64,000 nucleotides of DNA from Octopus bimaculoides (GCF_001194135.2 NC_068983.1:50046901-50110900); one strand, 5' to 3'. Positions 12,160 through 63,338 are shown, numbered from the stretch's first letter. Numbers and translations are program-made. The notes: generated by a model not told the origin, from the sequence alone.

Positions 12160-12859
12160 TTTTTACTGTAGGCACAAGGCCGAAATTTTTTGTGGAAGGA
12201 GTCCAGTCGATTAGATCGACACCAGTACGCAACTAGTACTTTAATTATCGACTCCGAAAGGATGAAAGGGAAAGTCGATCTCAGCGGAATTTGAACTCAA
12301 AACGTTGCTGTAGACGAAATACTGCTGAGCATTTTGCCCGGCGTGCTAATGTTTCTGCCAGCTCACCGACTTAAGTCTTACAAGATATTCTTTTCTACTC
12401 TAGGTACAAGGCTCGAAACTTTTGATGGAGGTAAGGGGCAGGTGATTAGATCTACCGCAGTATGTAACTGGTACTTAATTTATCGAACTCGAAAGGATGA
12501 AAAGCAAAGCAAACCTCGGCGAAATTTCAACTCAAAACGTAAAGACAGACGAAATGCCGTTAAGTATTTCGTCCGGCGTTCTAACGTTTCTTATTTCTTT
12601 ACTGCCCACAAAGGGCTACACACAGAGGGGACAAACGAGACAGACAAGCGGATTAAGTCGCTCATATCAACCCCAGTGCGTAACTGGTACTTATTTAATC
12701 GACCCCGAAAGGATGAAAGGCAAAGTCGATCTCAGCGGAATTCGAACTCAGAACGTAGCGGCAGACGAAATATCGCTAAGCATTTCGCCCGGCGTGCTAA
12801 CGTTTCTGCTTGCTCACCGCCTTAAGCCTTCTAAGATATTCTTTTCTACTCTAGGTACA
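12160..12859 (-). mobile_element. Head-to-tail array of at least 3 SINE family A units, running into a gap
   Basis: Repeated TTAATTATCGACTCCGAAAGGATGAAAGGGAAAGTCGATCTCAGCGGAATTTGAACTCAAAACG..GCCCGGCGTGCTAA..TCTGCCAGCTCACC at roughly 200-240 bp spacing. Confidence 0.9.
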
Positions 12860-25354: not shown

Positions 25355-25615
25355 GGAAATCTGTACATTATTTATATTATTTACATTCGACGGATATTTG
25401 TCCTCGTGTTGTTTGTTGTTAACACAACGTTTCGGCTGATATACCCTCTAACCTTCTTCAGGTGTCTTGGTGAAATTTCGAACCTGGGTTGTCATTCCTA
25501 AGGTATTTTACGATGTTATTAGTATTATTATTAATGTTCAGGTCACTGCCTGGAATTGAGCTCAGAATCTTGAGATTAGTAGCCCGCGCTCTTAACCACT
25601 ACGCCATATGCCTGT
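25355..25615 (-). mobile_element. tRNA-headed SINE whose 3' part contains a hammerhead ribozyme motif
   Basis: Minus head (25612->25540) GGCATATGGCGTAGTGGTTAAGAGCGCGGGCTACTAATCTCAAGATTCTGAGCTCAATTCCAGGCAG has A-box TGGCGTAGTGG and B-box-like GAGCTCAATTCC; then an (AAT)n linker, then the HHR at 25466->25421. Confidence 0.8.
25421..25466 (-). ncRNA. Minimal type I hammerhead motif (CUGAAGA core)
   Basis: Minus strand GACAC-CTGAAGA-A-GGTT-AGAGGGTATATC-AGCC-GAA-ACGT-T-GTGTT: 5-bp stem I, 4-bp stem II (one U-G), ACGT palindrome, GUU triplet. Confidence 0.75.
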
Positions 25616-28819: not shown

Positions 28820-29263
28820 TGGCTGAGTTCAAATTCCGCCGAGGTATACTTTACCTTTCATCCTTTTGTGGTCGATAAATTAAGTACCAATTACACACTG
28901 GGGTCGATCTAATCGACTGGCTCCCTCCCCAAAAATTTCGTGTACCTACAGTAGAAAAGATATTTCGCATTTAAGACGGTGAGCTGGCAGAAACGTTAGC
29001 ACGCCAGACGAAATACTTAGTGGTATTTCGTCCGTCTTTACGTTCTGAATTCAAATTCTGCCGAGGTCGACTTTGCTTTTTATTCTTTCGGGGTCGATAT
29101 GTTAAGTATCAGTTGCATACTGGGGTCGATCTAATCGACTGGCTCCCTCCCCAAAAATTTCGTGTACCTACAGTAGAAAAGATATTTCGCATTTAAGACG
29201 GTGAGCTGGCAGAAACGTTAGCACGCCAGACGAAATACTTAGTGGTATTTCGTCCGTCTTTAC
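28820..29263 (+). mobile_element. Tandem SINE family A units (~223-bp period), running into a gap
   Basis: About 145 bp from ACTGGGGTCGATCTAATCGACTGGCTCCCTCCCC to TTTCGTCCGTCTTTAC occurs twice essentially identically (about 28897 and 29120). Confidence 0.85.
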
Positions 29264-35397: not shown

Positions 35398-35622
35398 CCT
35401 TTACTTGTTTCAGTTATTTGACTGCGGCCATGCTGGAGCACCCGCATTTAGTCGAGCAAATCGACTCCAGGACTTATTCTTTGTAAGCCTAGTACTTATT
35501 CTAGCGGTCTCTTTTGCCGAACCGCTAAGTTACGGGGACGTAAACGCACCAGCATCGGTTGTCAAGCGAAGTTGGGGGACAAACACAGACACACAAACAT
35601 ATACACACATACATATATGCAT
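35398..35622 (-). mobile_element. SINE family B, 3' half, running into a gap
   Basis: TTTTACTTGTTTCAGTTATTTGACTGCGGCCATGCTGGAGCACC..CTTTTGCCGAACCGCTAAGTTACGGGGACGTAAAC. Confidence 0.85.
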
Positions 35623-36404: not shown

Positions 36405-36814
36405 TCAACGCCACCACCGCCGCTCCCGACGCCGCCGCTGCTGCTGCCACTACTACCACTACTACTACTACGTGCTTTTATAGACTTTTTAATTGTTCAA
36501 CATAATTCAAACACAATACGTATAATATTATATCTTATGATTCTATGTGTATGATTGTAAAGATCTGCTACAAAGGGCTGAAAGCTCTCTGAGTATTTAT
36601 TTATAAAGAGAATTATAATTAGATTGTGTGATGTTAAACTTTCATTTTCCTCTCTTAAGAAGATTAGTAAACACGAACCAACGAACGAGCTATTATTATG
36701 TCATCTGCTAGAAACAGCTACCAAATTTTCTTCAAATAACACCGAGATGCTTTATTCGAAAAAAACAAACTTCTACATTATATGCTCATGTGTGTTTGTG
36801 TATTTGTGTCGGTG

Positions 36815-36992
36815 TTTGTCATTCCACTCCACTGTTTCAGAGCCAGATTTGGTCTATTTACGTCCCCGTAACGTTAACAGTTCGGTAAGAGAGACTGAAA
36901 GAACAAGTACAAGAGTTAAAATAACGCACTGGAGACGATTTGTTCGAATAAAACTCGTCAAGGTGATACTCCAGCATGGTCGCAGTTCAACG
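36815..36992 (+). mobile_element. SINE family B, degraded 3' half
   Basis: TTTACGTCCCCGTAACGTTAACAGTTCGGTAAGAGAGAC..CTCCAGCATGGTCGCAGT. Confidence 0.6.
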
Positions 36993-37022
36993 AGTGAAAA
37001 TATATTTAGAACTGGATAAACT

Positions 37023-37640
37023 ATGAAGTAGTTGTATACTGTCAACTTAATGTGACAGTCCCCTGAAGGGAATAATACTACTGTTGGTTAGACCTAGGAA
37101 GCTGCACCGCTTCCTGTCGGCCTTGACACATTTCCGACAGGAAGCGTTGCAGCTTCCTATGTCTAACCAACAGTAGTATTATTCCCTTCAGGGAACTGTC
37201 ACATTAAGTTGGCAGCATACAACTACTTCATCGTATCACTACTGCATAAATCTCTCTGGGAGATTTAGAAATGTATTATTTCTAAATTTGAAATCAGTGA
37301 ATGTATTTCACGAGAATTATTATATGTTTACTAGAGCTTGACAGGTATCTTCGACTAGCAGGTGATGCTACTCCAGACTGATGACGAGGAAAGACTCAGA
37401 AACATGTCTCTAGATACAGGCTTAGCTGGGTAGAGGTGCTTGTCTCCCCCTTGTAAACATAAGGACACAGAAAATGTTTCAAAGCCGACAGGAAGCGGTG
37501 CAGCTTCCTAGATCTAACGAACAGTAGTATTATTCCCTTCAGCGGACTGTCACATAAAGTTGACAGCATACAACTACTTCATCGTATCACTACTGTATAA
37601 ATCTCTCTGAGCGATTTAGACATGTATTTTTTTCTAAAAA
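37023..37640 (+). mobile_element. 618-bp non-coding hammerhead-bearing retroelement: inverted partial repeat + 351-bp unit + partial direct repeat, 10-bp TSD
   Basis: TGGATAAACT at 37013-37022 and 37641-37650. 37023-37133 is an inverted copy of the repeat; 37134-37286 and 37485-37640 are ~153-bp direct repeats (~90% identical by eye); HHR at 37373-37413. Confidence 0.88.
37373..37413 (+). ncRNA. Minimal type I hammerhead motif (CUGAUGA core, GUC triplet)
   Basis: CCAGA-CTGATGA-C-GAG-GAAAGA-CTC-A-GAA-ACATGT-C-TCTAG: canonical core, 3-bp stem II with a C.A closing mismatch, 6-nt palindromic stem III, stem I AGA/TCT plus C-G after one mismatch. Confidence 0.72.
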
Positions 37641-37904
37641 TGGATAAACTGTGTCTGGAAAAGTAGTCATGGCTAGTTAGCTTTCGAACAAAGATATACC
37701 TGATCCAGGCCGATCTGGAGTAACAGTGCATCAAGCATGACATTAGAACATACAGATGAATCCTGAAAATAACATACTCACTTTGGAACACATTAACAAG
37801 AGAGGCCTGACTTGATCATTCAACTTACTGGAAATAGCAGTCAAATCCCTTACAAAATAACACCATATTCTCAAACGAGAAACAAAGAAAAGAAAATAAA
37901 TTAT

Positions 37905-38113
37905 GACTTGAAATTTGGGCAACAAGACAACAATTTCGAAGGAGGGGGTAAATCGATTACATTGATCCCAGTGTTCGACTGGTATTTAATTTATTGGCTC
38001 CGAAAGGATGAAAGACAAAGTCGACCTCGATGACATTTGACCTCTGAACGTGAAAACAGACGAAATGCCGCTAAAATTTCGTTCAGCGTGCTAACGATTC
38101 TGCCAACTCGCCG
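37905..38113 (-). mobile_element. SINE family A
   Basis: GACTGGTATTTAATTTATTGGCTCCGAAAGGATGAAAGACAAAGTCGACCTCG..GACGAAATGCCGCTAA..TCTGCCAACTCGCC. Confidence 0.8.
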
Positions 38114-38156
38114 TTTTAATAATAATAATAACAACAACAACAACAACAACAACAAC

Positions 38157-38209
<53 letters not shown>

Positions 38210-42840: not shown

Positions 42841-43054
42841 ATATATTTGTGTGTCTGTATTTGTCCCCCAACATCACTTGACAAACGATGCTGGTGTGTT
42901 TATGTCCCCGTAACTTAACGGTTCGGCAAAAGAGACCGCTAGAATAAGTACTAGGCTTACAAAGAATAAGTTCTGGGGCCGATTTGCTCGACTAAAGGCG
43001 TTGCTCCAGCATGGCCACAGTCCAATGACTGAAACAAGTAGAAAGGTAAAAGAG
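42587..43054 (+). mobile_element. SINE family B, full length with internal (TA)n(TG)n
   Basis: GGCGTAGGAGTGGCTGTGTGGTAAGTAGCTTGC..GGTTCCGGGTTCAG..AAGAAGCCCGTCG-(TA)n(TG)n-TCTGTATTTGTCCCCC..CAGCATGGCCACAGTCCAATGACTGAAACAAGT. Confidence 0.92.
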
Positions 43055-52650: not shown

Positions 52651-53144
52651 ATGCAGTTCAATGCAAACAAATTTCAAGTACTGCGCTACAAGACCACAAG
52701 TGCCTCCCAACTGGCATACAGAGGACCTGGAGGTACTGCAATCCCAGAACCACAAACAGTAAGAGATCTGGGCATCAACATGTGTAGTGATGCATCATTT
52801 CACATGCACATTGTCAAGTTGACAGCAAAGTGCAGACAACTGGCAGGGTGGATACTGAGGACATTCCGTACAGGGGATCAAAAAGTCATGTTGACTCTAT
52901 GGAAGACATTTGTTCTGAGCCGCCTAGACTATTGCTCTCAGTTGTGGTCACCACACAGTGTTAAGCGGACAGCAGAACGCAAGGCAATTCAGCAGCACTA
53001 TACAAAAAAGATCTCCACAGTCCAACAGATGAACTACAGGGAGCGACTGAAGGCACTAGGTCTCTACTCCCTGGAGCGCAGGCGGGAGTGATATGTAATA
53101 ATATACATATGGAAAATACTGGAAGGACTGGTGCCAAACTTTGG
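52651..53144 (+). mobile_element. CR1/L2-group LINE reverse transcriptase C-terminal fragment, between two gaps
   Basis: MQFNANKFQVLRY..VRDLGINMCSDASFHMHIVKLTAKCRQLAGWILRTF..LTLWKTFVLSRLDYCSQLWSPH..AIQQHYTKKI..MNYRERLKALGLYSLERRRE*YVIIYIWKILEGLVPNF; one in-frame stop. Confidence 0.92.
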
Positions 53145-60467: not shown

Positions 60468-60679
60468 AGTGTTTGTGTTCGTGTCTGTGATAGTTCCCGC
60501 AGCGTCGCTTGACAACCGATGCTGGTGTGTTTACGTCACCGTAACCTAGCGGTTCGGCAAAAGATACCGATAGAATAAGTACTAGGCTTACAAAGAATAA
60601 GCTCAGGGTTCAATTTGCTCGACTATAAAGGCGGTGCTCCAGCATGGCCGCAGTCAAATGACTGAAACAAGTAAAAGAG
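60223..60679 (+). mobile_element. SINE family B, full length
   Basis: GGCGCAGGGGTGGCTGTGTGGTAAGTAGCTTG..(TA)n(TG)n..CAGCATGGCCGCAGTCAAATGACTGAAACAAGTAAAAGAG. Confidence 0.92.
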
Positions 60680-62954: not shown

Positions 62955-63338
62955 TTTTTTACGTGTTTCAATCATTTGACTGCGGCCATGTTGGAGAACT
63001 ACCTTTAGTCGAACAAATCGACCCCGGAACTTATTCTCTGTAAACCTAGTACTTATTTTTACCGGTCTCTTTTGACGAACCGTTAAGTGACGGGGACGTA
63101 AATACTCCAACATAGATCGGCAAGCGAAAGTGGAGGGACAAATACAGACACACAAATACGTACACTCACACATACACTCATGTACGACGGGCTTCTTTCA
63201 GTTTCCATTTACCAAACCTACTCAGAAGACTTTGGTCGACCCGAGGCTATAGAAGAAGACACTTGCCCAAGGTACCACGCAGTAGGGCTGAAACCGGAAC
63301 CATGCGGTTGGGAAGCAAGCTTCTTACCACACAGCCAC
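62955..63338 (-). mobile_element. SINE family B, near full length
   Basis: TCATTTGACTGCGGCCATGTTGGAG..GGGGACGTAAA..CGACGGGCTTCTTTCAGTTTCC..GAAGACACTTGCCCAAGG..GCTTCTTACCACACAGCCAC. Confidence 0.88.

What the first reader, a model, noticed from the sequence alone, without database searches (positions are those of the whole stretch)
37013..37650. Complete 618-bp hammerhead element with inverted plus direct terminal repeats and a perfect 10-bp TSD
Seen: TGGATAAACT flanks both ends (37013-37022, 37641-37650), so the block inserted as one unit. Inside, 37023-37133 is an inverted copy forming a ~97-bp near-perfect hairpin with 37134-37231. Its apparent loop (CCTTGACACATTT) is the reverse complement of sequence resembling that preceding the repeat at 37485 (AAATGTTTCAAAG), so the inverted copy abuts the direct copy. 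A 351-bp unit (37134-37484) holds an HHR with canonical CUGAUGA core and GUC triplet, followed by a partial second unit (37485-37640). There is no ORF. Established: partial tandem and inverted pseudo-LTRs with HHRs are typical of PLE insertions, and animal retrozymes are tandem monomers of a few hundred nt with minimal HHRs. Inference: reverse transcription of a circular or multimeric ~351-nt RNA ran past one unit and then switched template, producing the inversion.
Basis: partly seen in the sequence, partly recalled or inferred. Interest (0 to 1): 0.85.

Follow-up and report, generated by a model that had tools for sequence, protein, structure and literature searches.

The report
Dead retrozyme insertion with Penelope-style architecture
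This is one old, non-coding insertion of a small hammerhead-ribozyme retroelement (an animal "retrozyme"), and its head-to-head plus partial-tandem layout suggests that the enzyme of a Penelope-like retrotransposon pasted it in; it is a known kind of element, and this copy carries a single imperfect ribozyme, so it probably cannot make RNA circles.

Summary
TGGATAAACT occurs only twice in the window, exactly flanking a 618-bp block (37023-37640). The block holds an inverted 5'-truncated copy, one full 351-nt unit and a 153-nt partial second unit, with no ORF over 57 aa. Rfam finds no hammerhead. However, a covariance model built only from three experimentally validated retrozyme ribozymes (coral, mussel, axolotl) gives one significant full-length hit in the window, at 37371-37415 (19.5 bits, E~0.003). 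Its segment lengths match the validated axolotl Ax330 ribozyme and its helix III (GAAACAUGUC) is identical. It carries two mismatches (C·A at the base of helix II, C·A in helix I) and is the only ribozyme at the locus. The layout is the published signature of Penelope-like element insertions. No other copy could be retrieved, so copy number, consensus ribozyme and end clustering remain untested. Verdict: probably a new member of a known kind (non-LTR retrozyme, a non-autonomous PLE derivative), of moderate interest.

The parts
37013..37022 (.). Left target-site duplication, TGGATAAACT
   Evidence: Exact 10-mer found only here and at 37641-37650 in the window.
37023..37133 (-). Inverted, 5'-truncated copy. 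Read on the minus strand it is unit positions 339-351 followed by 1 to ~99. Its RNA-3'-ward end abuts the left TSD, with 1-3 nt of microhomology at 37020-37022.
   Evidence: Inverted repeats I1 (114 nt, 93%) and I2 (101 nt, 94%); three-way alignment; only 1-2 private changes per 99 nt.
37134..37484 (+). One full 351-nt non-coding unit (GC 0.40). It starts at the head-to-head junction with the inverted copy.
   Evidence: Direct-repeat period of 351. No ORF over 57 aa. No protein homologue in any frame. Folded as a circle: MFE -91 kcal/mol, z = -2.65.
37371..37415 (+). Type-I hammerhead of the retrozyme (newt/axolotl/mussel) architecture.
- Helix I: 37371-77 with 37409-15.
- Core: CUGAUGA at 37378-84.
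- Helix II: 37385-88 with 37395-98, with C37385·A37398 at its base.
- Loop 2: GAAAGA.
- GAA: 37399-401.
- Helix III: the palindrome ACAUGU at 37402-07, predicted to pair between two ribozyme copies.
- Cleavage: after C37408.
   Evidence: Covariance model R1, built from three validated retrozyme HHRs, scores it 19.5 bits at E = 0.0026 over the window. It is the only significant hit. Side-by-side table with validated HHRs. Descriptor scan.
37323..37461 (+). Long imperfect hairpin that extends helix I of the ribozyme into a rod of about 45 bp.
   Evidence: MFE folds; inverted repeat I4.
37216..37243 (+). G-poor, A/C-rich tract (unit 83-110), mostly unpaired in the predicted fold, lying just after a 6-bp stem-loop. 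The inverted copy's outer end (unit ~99) maps inside it, so it is a candidate reverse-transcription start site A.
Evidence: Lowest G content of any 24-nt window in the unit, with A+C = 0.67. Unit folds; hairpin at 37196-37215.
37263..37287 (+). Perfect 10-bp stem with a 5-nt loop (ATTTAGAAAT-GTATT-ATTTCTAAAT). Its 3' edge (unit 154) coincides with the position where the partial second unit stops, so it is a candidate reverse-transcription start site B.
   Evidence: Inverted repeat I11; fold; alignment of the two direct copies.
37485..37640 (+). Partial second unit (unit 1-153 plus two extra A), forming a pseudo-LTR-like direct repeat. It stops 122 nt before the unit position of the ribozyme cut (275), so it has no second ribozyme.
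   Evidence: 91% identity to 37134-37286, with 13 mismatches and 2 gap columns.
37641..37650 (.). Right target-site duplication, TGGATAAACT

Best explanation
This is a single fossil insertion of a short, non-coding, hammerhead-bearing retroelement: a metazoan 'non-LTR retrozyme', that is, a non-autonomous derivative or passenger of Penelope-like elements (PLEs).

Inferred mechanism:
1. A PLE-type RT/GIY-YIG enzyme made nicks 10 bp apart in an AT-rich site (...TTTAGAAC|TGGATAAACT|GTGTC...).
2. Both exposed 3' ends primed reverse transcription on a retrozyme RNA longer than one unit, either a multimeric transcript or a 351-nt circle.
3. The bottom-strand primer started at unit position ~153, at the 3' edge of a 10-bp hairpin. 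It copied 1.44 units and stopped at unit position 1.
4. The top-strand primer started at unit position ~99, in a G-poor A/C-rich tract. It copied 114 nt back to unit position 339.
5. Host repair joined the two cDNAs head to head.

This yields TSD, inverted truncated copy, full unit, partial unit, TSD. The outer ends differ by ~54 nt, which matches the PLE 'tail present at one end'.

Shown directly: the anatomy, the TSD, the absence of coding capacity, and the match of the ribozyme to validated retrozyme HHRs. Inferred: the enzyme, the dual priming, the start sites, and the nature of the template.

This copy is about 2-4% decayed per arm. It has one ribozyme with two mismatches, and the ribozyme is of a type expected to need a second copy to pair helix III. 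The locus is therefore most likely dead on arrival for circle production.
For: 1. Discrete insertion. The perfect 10-bp TSD occurs only at the two block edges.
2. Published PLE insertion hallmarks are all present: 5' truncation, a partial tandem forming a pseudo-LTR, an inverted 5'-truncated copy adjacent at the 5' end, and an extension at one end only (Craig et al. 2021, PMC8557442; anatomy).
3. A purified PLE enzyme cleaves and extends both target strands and starts RT at two adjacent internal RNA sites downstream of its HHR (Frangieh et al. 2024, PMC11167929). Here both arms point their RNA-3'-ward ends outward, and both putative start sites lie downstream of the HHR cut (176 and 229 nt).
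4. The ribozyme lies on the strand that this polarity predicts.
5. The ribozyme call is independent of this sequence. A model from coral, mussel and axolotl ribozymes gives a single full-length hit at E = 0.0026, against a noise ceiling of 12 bits. Segment lengths match axolotl Ax330 and helix III is identical to it. A helix II base mismatch has a precedent in Ax353, which has U·U.
6. Retrozyme-class traits are met: a 351-nt unit (mussel 353), GC 0.40, no ORF, a TSD longer than 4 bp, and a self-paired fold with z = -2.65.
7. No frame of the unit resembles any protein, and there is no tRNA-like head.
8. The three partial copies differ in a star-like way, with 1-2, 4 and 4 private changes per 99 nt. 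This fits one event from a homogeneous template followed by decay.
9. The 6% arm divergence excludes an assembly palindrome artefact.
Against: - Only one locus is available. No other copy exists in the window, and none was retrievable from any collection. Repetitiveness, the consensus ribozyme and clustering of ends are all untested.
- The window has no PLE coding remnant, and the source organism is not identified by any tool.
- Rfam reports no hammerhead even at E <= 10 on 91 nt.
- The ribozyme has C·A mismatches at 10.1/11.1 and in helix I, and helix II has only 3 Watson-Crick pairs.
- The offset between the outer ends is 54 nt, against the 30-40 nt reported for PLE tails.
- The ribozyme lies in the non-duplicated part of the unit, not inside the repeated pseudo-LTR segment.
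- The inner junction shows no evident microhomology.
Confidence: 0.6

Rival explanations
1. A single cDNA was primed at the right end, ran 1.44 units along a circular or multimeric RNA, then switched template or folded back on itself to generate the inverted arm. The element is still a retrozyme/PLE-type insertion.
For: The arms form a hairpin of about 100 bp with only a 13-nt spacer. Retroviral-type RTs can snap back. The star-like divergence of the three copies does not exclude it.
Against: - A snap-back copies the nascent cDNA from the fold point, yet the inverted arm contains unit 339-351, which the adjoining direct copy lacks.
- The inverted arm's outer end abuts a perfect TSD with microhomology, as expected for a primed end.
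- That outer end falls in a G-poor, A/C-rich tract that is mostly unpaired in the predicted fold, resembling the mapped PLE start site.
- Dual-strand extension has direct biochemical support for PLEs.
Confidence: 0.12
2. The insertion was made by a LINE (non-PLE) enzyme through classical twin priming of a SINE-like or satellite transcript. The hammerhead is incidental or non-functional.
For: - L1-type twin priming also gives a TSD plus an inverted 5' segment (established knowledge).
- LINE reverse transcriptases are present in this genome (RT tail at 52651-53088).
- Cervera & de la Pena 2020 left LINEs open as possible mobilisers.
- The direct copy ends in CTAAAAA.
Against: - There is no poly(A) or microsatellite tail beyond two extra A.
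- There is no tRNA/pol III head.
- Chance co-occurrence of a significant retrozyme-type HHR, in the correct orientation, inside a 618-bp block is about 1e-3.
Confidence: 0.1
3. It is a heavily 5'-truncated fragment of an autonomous PLE (UTR/pseudo-LTR region with an internal repeat), not a separate non-coding family.
For: PLE insertions are mostly 5'-truncated and carry HHRs near the pLTR/ORF junction.
Against: - A 351-nt periodicity in a 507-nt direct segment is not expected from a 3-kb element.
- No frame matches any protein, PLE ORFs included.
- Tblastn with the PAc protein finds nothing in the window.
- The HHR has the retrozyme architecture (4-bp helix II), not the PLE min-HHR architecture. 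It fails the strict min-HHR descriptor that recovers PAc.
Confidence: 0.06
4. It is not a mobile element. A local duplication/inversion (replication-based rearrangement) of unique sequence happens to contain a hammerhead-like motif.
For: No second copy was found anywhere.
Against: - The searchable collections do not contain this species. The best homologue of the window's LINE RT fragment (itself in a multicopy family) is only 67% identical, so absence is uninformative.
- Perfect 10-bp direct repeats sit exactly at the block edges.
- The ribozyme is significant by an independent model.
- The layout matches a known transposition signature.
Confidence: 0.05

Closest known systems
Metazoan non-LTR retrozymes (Cervera & de la Pena 2020, PMC7229834), especially the mussel Mg353 and axolotl Ax330/Ax353 repeats
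   Same: - Non-coding unit of about 350 nt (351 here; mussel 353).
- Low GC (0.40).
- Type-I HHR with CUGAUGA, a 4-position helix II, a 5-6-nt loop, GAAAC, a palindromic helix III and GUC|U.
- Helix III is identical to Ax330 (GAAACAUGUC).
- TSD longer than 4 bp.
- Self-paired predicted fold with the HHR embedded in a long rod.
   Different: - This locus has 1.44 units and only one HHR, not a tandem with an HHR in every unit.
- There is an inverted truncated copy at the 5' side.
- The HHR has two C·A mismatches.
- No sequence similarity outside the ribozyme core.
- Expression as a circle and copy number are unknown.
Penelope-like element insertions (Evgen'ev & Arkhipova 2005; Arkhipova 2006; Craig et al. 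2021, PMC8557442) and the PAc mechanism (Frangieh et al. 2024, PMC11167929)
   Same: - 5' truncation.
- A partial tandem giving pseudo-LTRs.
- An inverted 5'-truncated copy immediately upstream.
- An extension at one end only.
- An AT-rich target.
- The HHR lies upstream of the RT start sites.
- The structure is explained by priming from both nicked strands.
   Different: - No RT/GIY-YIG ORF (non-autonomous).
- The unit is 351 nt rather than ~3 kb.
- The end offset is 54 nt rather than 30-40 nt.
- The HHR is the 'canonical' retrozyme type, not the minimal PLE type.
- The HHR is outside the duplicated segment.
Newt satellite 2 / Schistosoma Sm-alpha type dimer-dependent hammerheads (Forster et al. 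1988, cited in PMC4209133)
   Same: Short helix III with a palindromic loop, expected to be active only when two ribozyme copies pair.
   Different: Those are high-copy tandem satellites or SINE-like families with many intact ribozymes. Here a single decayed copy was examined.
L1 twin-priming inversions (Ostertag & Kazazian 2001; from my own knowledge)
   Same: TSD-flanked insertion with an inverted 5' segment, produced by priming from both target strands.
   Different: L1 events copy adjacent parts of one linear poly(A) RNA and end in poly(A). Here the arms overlap by ~99 nt of unit sequence, the template exceeds one unit, and there is no poly(A).

Membership tests
Type-I hammerhead ribozyme (retrozyme/newt architecture) | Conserved core: C3 U4 G5 A6 N7 G8 A9, G12 A13 A14, A15.1-U16.1, H17 | tested here: met
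   CUGAUGA at 37378-84, GAA at 37399-401, A37402...U37407, C37408.
Type-I hammerhead ribozyme (retrozyme/newt architecture) | Significant match to a covariance model of experimentally validated members | tested here: met
   Model R1 (coral, mussel, axolotl Ax353) gives 19.5 bits, E = 0.0026 over 64 kb on both strands, full-length 1-46. It is the only hit below E = 0.5. E-values are rough (short calibration, 3 seed sequences).
Type-I hammerhead ribozyme (retrozyme/newt architecture) | Helices I and II fully base-paired, with a G10.1-C11.1 closing pair | tested here: not met
   C37385·A37398 at 10.1/11.1 and C37374·A37412 in helix I. Validated Ax353 has U·U at the same helix II position. A37398 follows C37397, so a CpG-to-CpA decay from a C-G pair is possible (inference).
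Type-I hammerhead ribozyme (retrozyme/newt architecture) | Short helix III with palindromic 15.x-16.x/loop 3 (dimer-competent) | tested here: met
   ACAUGU at 37402-07 is a palindrome, identical to Ax330. Intermolecular duplex energy is -6.0 kcal/mol.
Type-I hammerhead ribozyme (retrozyme/newt architecture) | Self-cleavage activity | not testable with these tools
   Needs in vitro transcription of monomeric and dimeric constructs.
Rfam hammerhead families (Hammerhead_1, _3, _II, HH9, HH10) | Score at or above the gathering threshold | tested here: not met
   No hammerhead hit at gathering, nor at E <= 10 on 1.7 kb or 91 nt. Rfam also misses the strict min-HHR motif at 25.4 kb.
PLE minimal HHR (Cervera & de la Pena 2014) | Bulged nucleotide after A9, long helix II (6-8 bp) closed by G10.1-C11.1, helix III absent or 2-4-nt palindrome | tested here: not met
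   It fails the strict descriptor that recovers the PAc ribozyme. Helix II has 3-4 positions. The architecture is the retrozyme type instead.
Metazoan non-LTR retrozyme | Non-coding unit of ~150-450 bp with low GC | tested here: met
   351 nt, GC 0.40, longest ORF 57 aa, no protein homologue in any frame.
Metazoan non-LTR retrozyme | Tandem copies each carrying an HHR (at least two HHRs, so that a monomer can be excised) | tested here: not met
   There are 1.44 direct units. The second stops at unit 153, before the HHR (cut at unit 275), so the locus has one HHR. It corresponds to the 'monomer derivatives' of Li et al. 2026.
Metazoan non-LTR retrozyme | TSD, when present, longer than 4 bp | tested here: met
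   10 bp, perfect (criterion).
Metazoan non-LTR retrozyme | Multi-copy family expressed as circular RNA | not testable with these tools
   No DNA or RNA of the source species is reachable.
PLE-type insertion architecture | 5' truncation plus a partial tandem forming pseudo-LTRs | tested here: met
   Unit 1-351 followed by 1-153, 91% identical. Criterion.
PLE-type insertion architecture | [quoted passage not shown] | tested here: met
   37023-37133 is the reverse complement of unit 339-351 plus 1-99, head to head with 37134.
PLE-type insertion architecture | 30-40-bp 'tail' extension at one end, reflecting two RT start sites | tested here: inconclusive
   The outer ends are at unit ~99 and ~153, a 54-nt offset. 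One locus cannot show whether these are preferred sites.
PLE-type insertion architecture | RT plus GIY-YIG ORF (autonomous element) | tested here: not met
   No ORF and no protein similarity. Tblastn with PAc finds nothing in the window. If it belongs here at all, it does so as a non-autonomous passenger.
tRNA-derived SINE | tRNA-like pol III head | tested here: not met
   ARAGORN finds nothing in 36500-38200 or in the whole window. No Rfam tRNA hit.

The most novel reading that the evidence does not exclude
This locus is a natural footprint showing that a canonical-type retrozyme RNA, not a PLE's own RNA, was integrated by PLE-style dual-strand target-primed reverse transcription. The two internal start sites would be a G-poor A/C-rich tract at unit ~99 and the 3' edge of a hairpin at unit ~153. 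If family-wide ends cluster there, this would give direct structural evidence for the proposed but unproven retrozyme-PLE mobilisation link. It would also map the cis signal that lets retrozymes hijack the PLE enzyme, in a lineage (possibly cephalopods) where none of the papers consulted here describes retrozymes.
Probability: 0.3. Interest if true: 0.55.

Novelty: new member of a known kind. Interest (0 to 1): 0.35.

Why it matters
Animal retrozymes are abundant sources of small circular RNAs. How they get back into DNA is still inferred from co-occurrence and from pseudo-LTR phylogeny with Penelope-like elements (PMC7229834; bioRxiv 10.64898/2026.07.22.740005).

A TSD-bounded retrozyme insertion that shows the specific PLE insertion scars (inverted truncated copy, partial tandem, one-sided extension) is the kind of structural evidence that could link the two. 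It also gives concrete candidate RT-initiation sites to test.

By itself a single decayed copy adds an example, not a new principle.

Tried and rejected
1. Rfam at gathering and at E <= 10 gave no hammerhead. I do not treat this as decisive, because Rfam also misses a strict PLE-type min-HHR in the same window.
2. Other copies through the protein index. The 57-aa antisense ORF and a six-frame composite of 37134-37640 found nothing. Exact look-ups of window ORFs are not on record.
3. Exact-pattern DNA scans of metagenome, viral and prokaryote-genome collections with family-specific and HHR-anchored patterns all returned 0.
4. Organism identification through the LINE RT tail. The best homologue is only 67% identical, from an unnamed Logan/ENA contig, so the species is not in the ORF-called collections. 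From memory, the flanking repeats look like octopus SINEs. No tool verified this.
5. Surrogate empty site from paralogous repeats. The upstream repeat ends at ~36999, 13 bp before the TSD, and no paralogue spans the junction.
6. PLE coding remnants in the window, searched with the published Poseidon_Ac protein: none.
7. Homology of the unit to published coral, mussel and axolotl retrozymes: none beyond the 11-nt ribozyme core.
8. The weak miRNA (mir-31_2, 33 bits vs 97) and C/D snoRNA hits are artefacts of the long hairpin and of UGAUGA/CUGA strings.
9. An assembly palindrome artefact is rejected, because the arms differ at 6% of positions.
10. TIR DNA transposon and LTR readings are rejected. 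The two termini are not inverted repeats of each other, there is no TG..CA, and the TSD is 10 bp.

Full report
**Observation**

The block is as described. TGGATAAACT lies at 37013-37022 and 37641-37650. These are the only two occurrences in the 64-kb window, both on the + strand (0.33 expected by chance). Only 0.6% of random pairs of 50-nt windows drawn from this window share any 10-mer.

Between the two copies lie 618 bp:
- An inverted segment, 37023-37133.
- A full 351-nt unit, 37134-37484.
- A partial second unit, 37485-37640, which is 91% identical to the start of the first.

The inverted segment pairs with 37134-37234 (101 nt, 94%). Including the 13-nt 'loop', it pairs with 37472-37585 (114 nt, 93%). 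Read on the minus strand it is therefore unit positions 339-351 followed by 1 to ~99.

The longest ORF inside the block is 57 aa, antisense. The 6% divergence between the arms rules out an assembly palindrome artefact.

**Context**

The window is a gap-rich (6,122 N), microsatellite-rich eukaryotic draft sequence with 36% GC. It contains SINE-like repeats and a LINE RT tail.

The unit has no other copy in the window. The insertion lies 13 bp downstream of the end of a repeat with four paralogues in the window. No paralogue spans the insertion point, so there is no surrogate empty site.

**The ribozyme**

Rfam reports no hammerhead at gathering thresholds. It reports none at E <= 10 on 1.7 kb or on 91 nt either.

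By hand, all core nucleotides are present:
- CUGAUGA at 37378-84.
- G12-A14 at 37399-401.
- A15.1 and U16.1 at 37402 and 37407.
- C17 at 37408.

Helix III is just AC-AU-GU, which is the palindrome ACAUGU. A descriptor I wrote after seeing the site finds one hit in the window. Chance expectation is 0.1 per window, or 0.003 if the palindromic helix III is required. That descriptor is post hoc.

The decisive test used sequences independent of this window. Supplementary Table 2 of Cervera & de la Pena 2020 gives four experimentally cleaving retrozyme constructs. I aligned three of them: coral Amil224, mussel Mg353 and axolotl Ax353. I supplied the textbook structure and built covariance model R1.
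- Over the whole window on both strands, R1 gives one significant, full-length match at 37371-37415 (+), with 19.5 bits and E = 0.0026.
- With filters off, the next hits score 12 bits or less.
- E-values are rough, because the model has three seeds and a short calibration.

The fourth construct, axolotl Ax330, was left out of the model. It has exactly the candidate's segment lengths (7-4-6-4-GAAAC-AU-GUC) and the same GAAACAUGUC.

Two departures remain: C37385·A37398 at the base of helix II, and C37374·A37412 in helix I. Ax353 carries a U·U at the same helix II position. A37398 follows a C, so CpG decay of an ancestral C-G pair is a reasonable but untested explanation.

This ribozyme type is described as needing two copies to form helix III (PMC4209133). 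The locus holds only one, because the partial unit stops at unit 153 and the cut site is at unit 275. This copy is therefore unlikely to release monomers or circles.

**What kind of element**

The unit matches the retrozyme class:
- It is 351 nt with GC 0.40.
- It is non-coding, with no protein similarity in any of the six frames against 5.8 billion proteins.
- It has no tRNA-like head.
- It folds more stably than shuffles as a circle (z = -2.65), with the ribozyme embedded in a ~45-bp rod.

These are the class features of metazoan non-LTR retrozymes: units of 150-450 bp, low GC, TSDs longer than 4 bp, and self-paired circles. The mussel unit is 353 nt. No sequence similarity to published retrozymes exists beyond the ribozyme core, as expected for species-specific families.

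**How it was inserted**

[quoted passage not shown] 2021).

Frangieh et al. 2024 showed that a purified PLE protein nicks and extends both target strands. It starts reverse transcription at two adjacent internal RNA sites downstream of its hammerhead, in an AC-rich stem-loop.

This locus fits that scheme:
- Both arms have their RNA-3'-ward ends outward, against the TSDs.
- The ribozyme lies on the strand this polarity predicts.
- The left arm ends at unit ~99, inside the most G-poor, A/C-rich tract of the unit, which is mostly unpaired in the predicted fold.
- The right arm ends at unit ~153, the 3' edge of a perfect 10-bp hairpin.
- Both ends lie downstream of the ribozyme cut, by 176 and 229 nt.
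- They differ by ~54 nt, a tail-like asymmetry.

The contiguous 1.44 units require a template longer than a monomer, meaning a multimeric transcript or a circle. The data do not distinguish the two.

The three overlapping copies differ in a star-like way, with 1-2, 4 and 4 private changes per 99 nt. This fits one event from a homogeneous template followed by about 2-4% decay per copy. That level of decay is compatible with an intact 10-bp TSD pair.

**Why not a template switch**

A fold-back of one cDNA should mirror the adjoining direct copy from the fold point. Instead, the inverted arm carries unit 339-351, which the adjoining copy lacks. Its outer end also behaves like a primed end, with TSD abutment and 1-3 nt of microhomology.

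I keep this rival at 0.12. A LINE-mediated twin-priming event, a truncated autonomous PLE and a non-transposon rearrangement are less likely, for the reasons given under rival explanations.

**Limits**

Everything at family level is untested. No DNA from the source species is reachable.
- The best homologue of the window's LINE RT fragment is only 67% identical.
- All exact-pattern scans and protein-index tricks returned nothing.
- The window contains no PLE coding remnant.
- The organism is unidentified. My recollection that the flanking repeats resemble octopus SINEs is not a tool result. If it is correct, active Penelope families are documented in Octopus vulgaris (PMC13282606).

**Verdict**

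The ribozyme is supported by an independent model but is imperfect. The element is best read as a dead, single-ribozyme copy of a non-LTR retrozyme, integrated by PLE-style dual-strand target-primed reverse transcription.

This is a new member of a known kind. The most interesting aspect is that the insertion scars offer structural evidence for the proposed retrozyme-PLE link. One locus cannot establish that link.

Noticed in passing
window 25421-25466, minus strand (CTGAAGA begins at + coordinate 25461): A second, unrelated hammerhead-like motif of the minimal PLE type: GACAC-CUGAAGA-A-GGUUAGAGGGUAUAUCAGCC-GAAACGUU-GUGUU, followed at once by an AC-rich tract (AACAACAAACAACAC). It passes a strict min-HHR descriptor that also recovers the validated PAc ribozyme, and the chance expectation is 0.002 per window. 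It is single-copy in the window, shares no similarity with the 351-nt unit, has no PLE-like repeats around it, and is missed by both Rfam and model R1. It is flanked on both sides by TAA-rich sequence. It could be the 3' stub of a heavily truncated PLE insertion.
   Followed up: partly
window 37154-37169 vs 37640-37653: The unit sequence just beyond the point where the direct copy stops (TTTGAAATCAGTG, unit 154-166 in the first copy) loosely resembles the right TSD plus flank (ATGGATAAACTGTG). More broadly, 37007-37025 and 37635-37653 match at 16 of 19 positions (D4). This may be chance, or a hint of limited target/RNA homology at the priming site.
   Followed up: no
window 37076-37180: The 101-bp inverted repeat gives a sub-threshold Rfam mir-31_2 hit (33 bits vs a gathering score of 97). 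It is a generic long hairpin, not a miRNA gene. If transcribed, it would form dsRNA that could feed small-RNA pathways against the family.
   Followed up: no
window 52651-53088 (+): An intact 146-aa C-terminal fragment of a non-LTR (LINE) reverse transcriptase lies immediately after an assembly gap. The best database homologue is only 67% identical, from unnamed Logan/ENA contigs. More distant named hits come from a mantis shrimp and a hydrozoan.
   Followed up: partly
window 36788-36999; paralogues at 35408-35610, 42892-43034, 60523-60667, 62966-63173. Also 37931-38100, with 10 or more paralogues including 12140-12591 and 28823-29263: Two dispersed SINE-like repeat families flank the insertion, at ~70-80% identity between copies. 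One of them also forms 222-235-bp two-copy tandems. ARAGORN finds no tRNA-like heads anywhere in the window.
   Followed up: partly
whole window: 9.6% of the window is N (6,122 bases). In the ORF listing, many gaps open directly next to TA/CA/ACT-type microsatellites. This is typical of a short-read draft assembly, and complex tandem/inverted PLE-type insertions elsewhere may be collapsed or missing.
   Followed up: no
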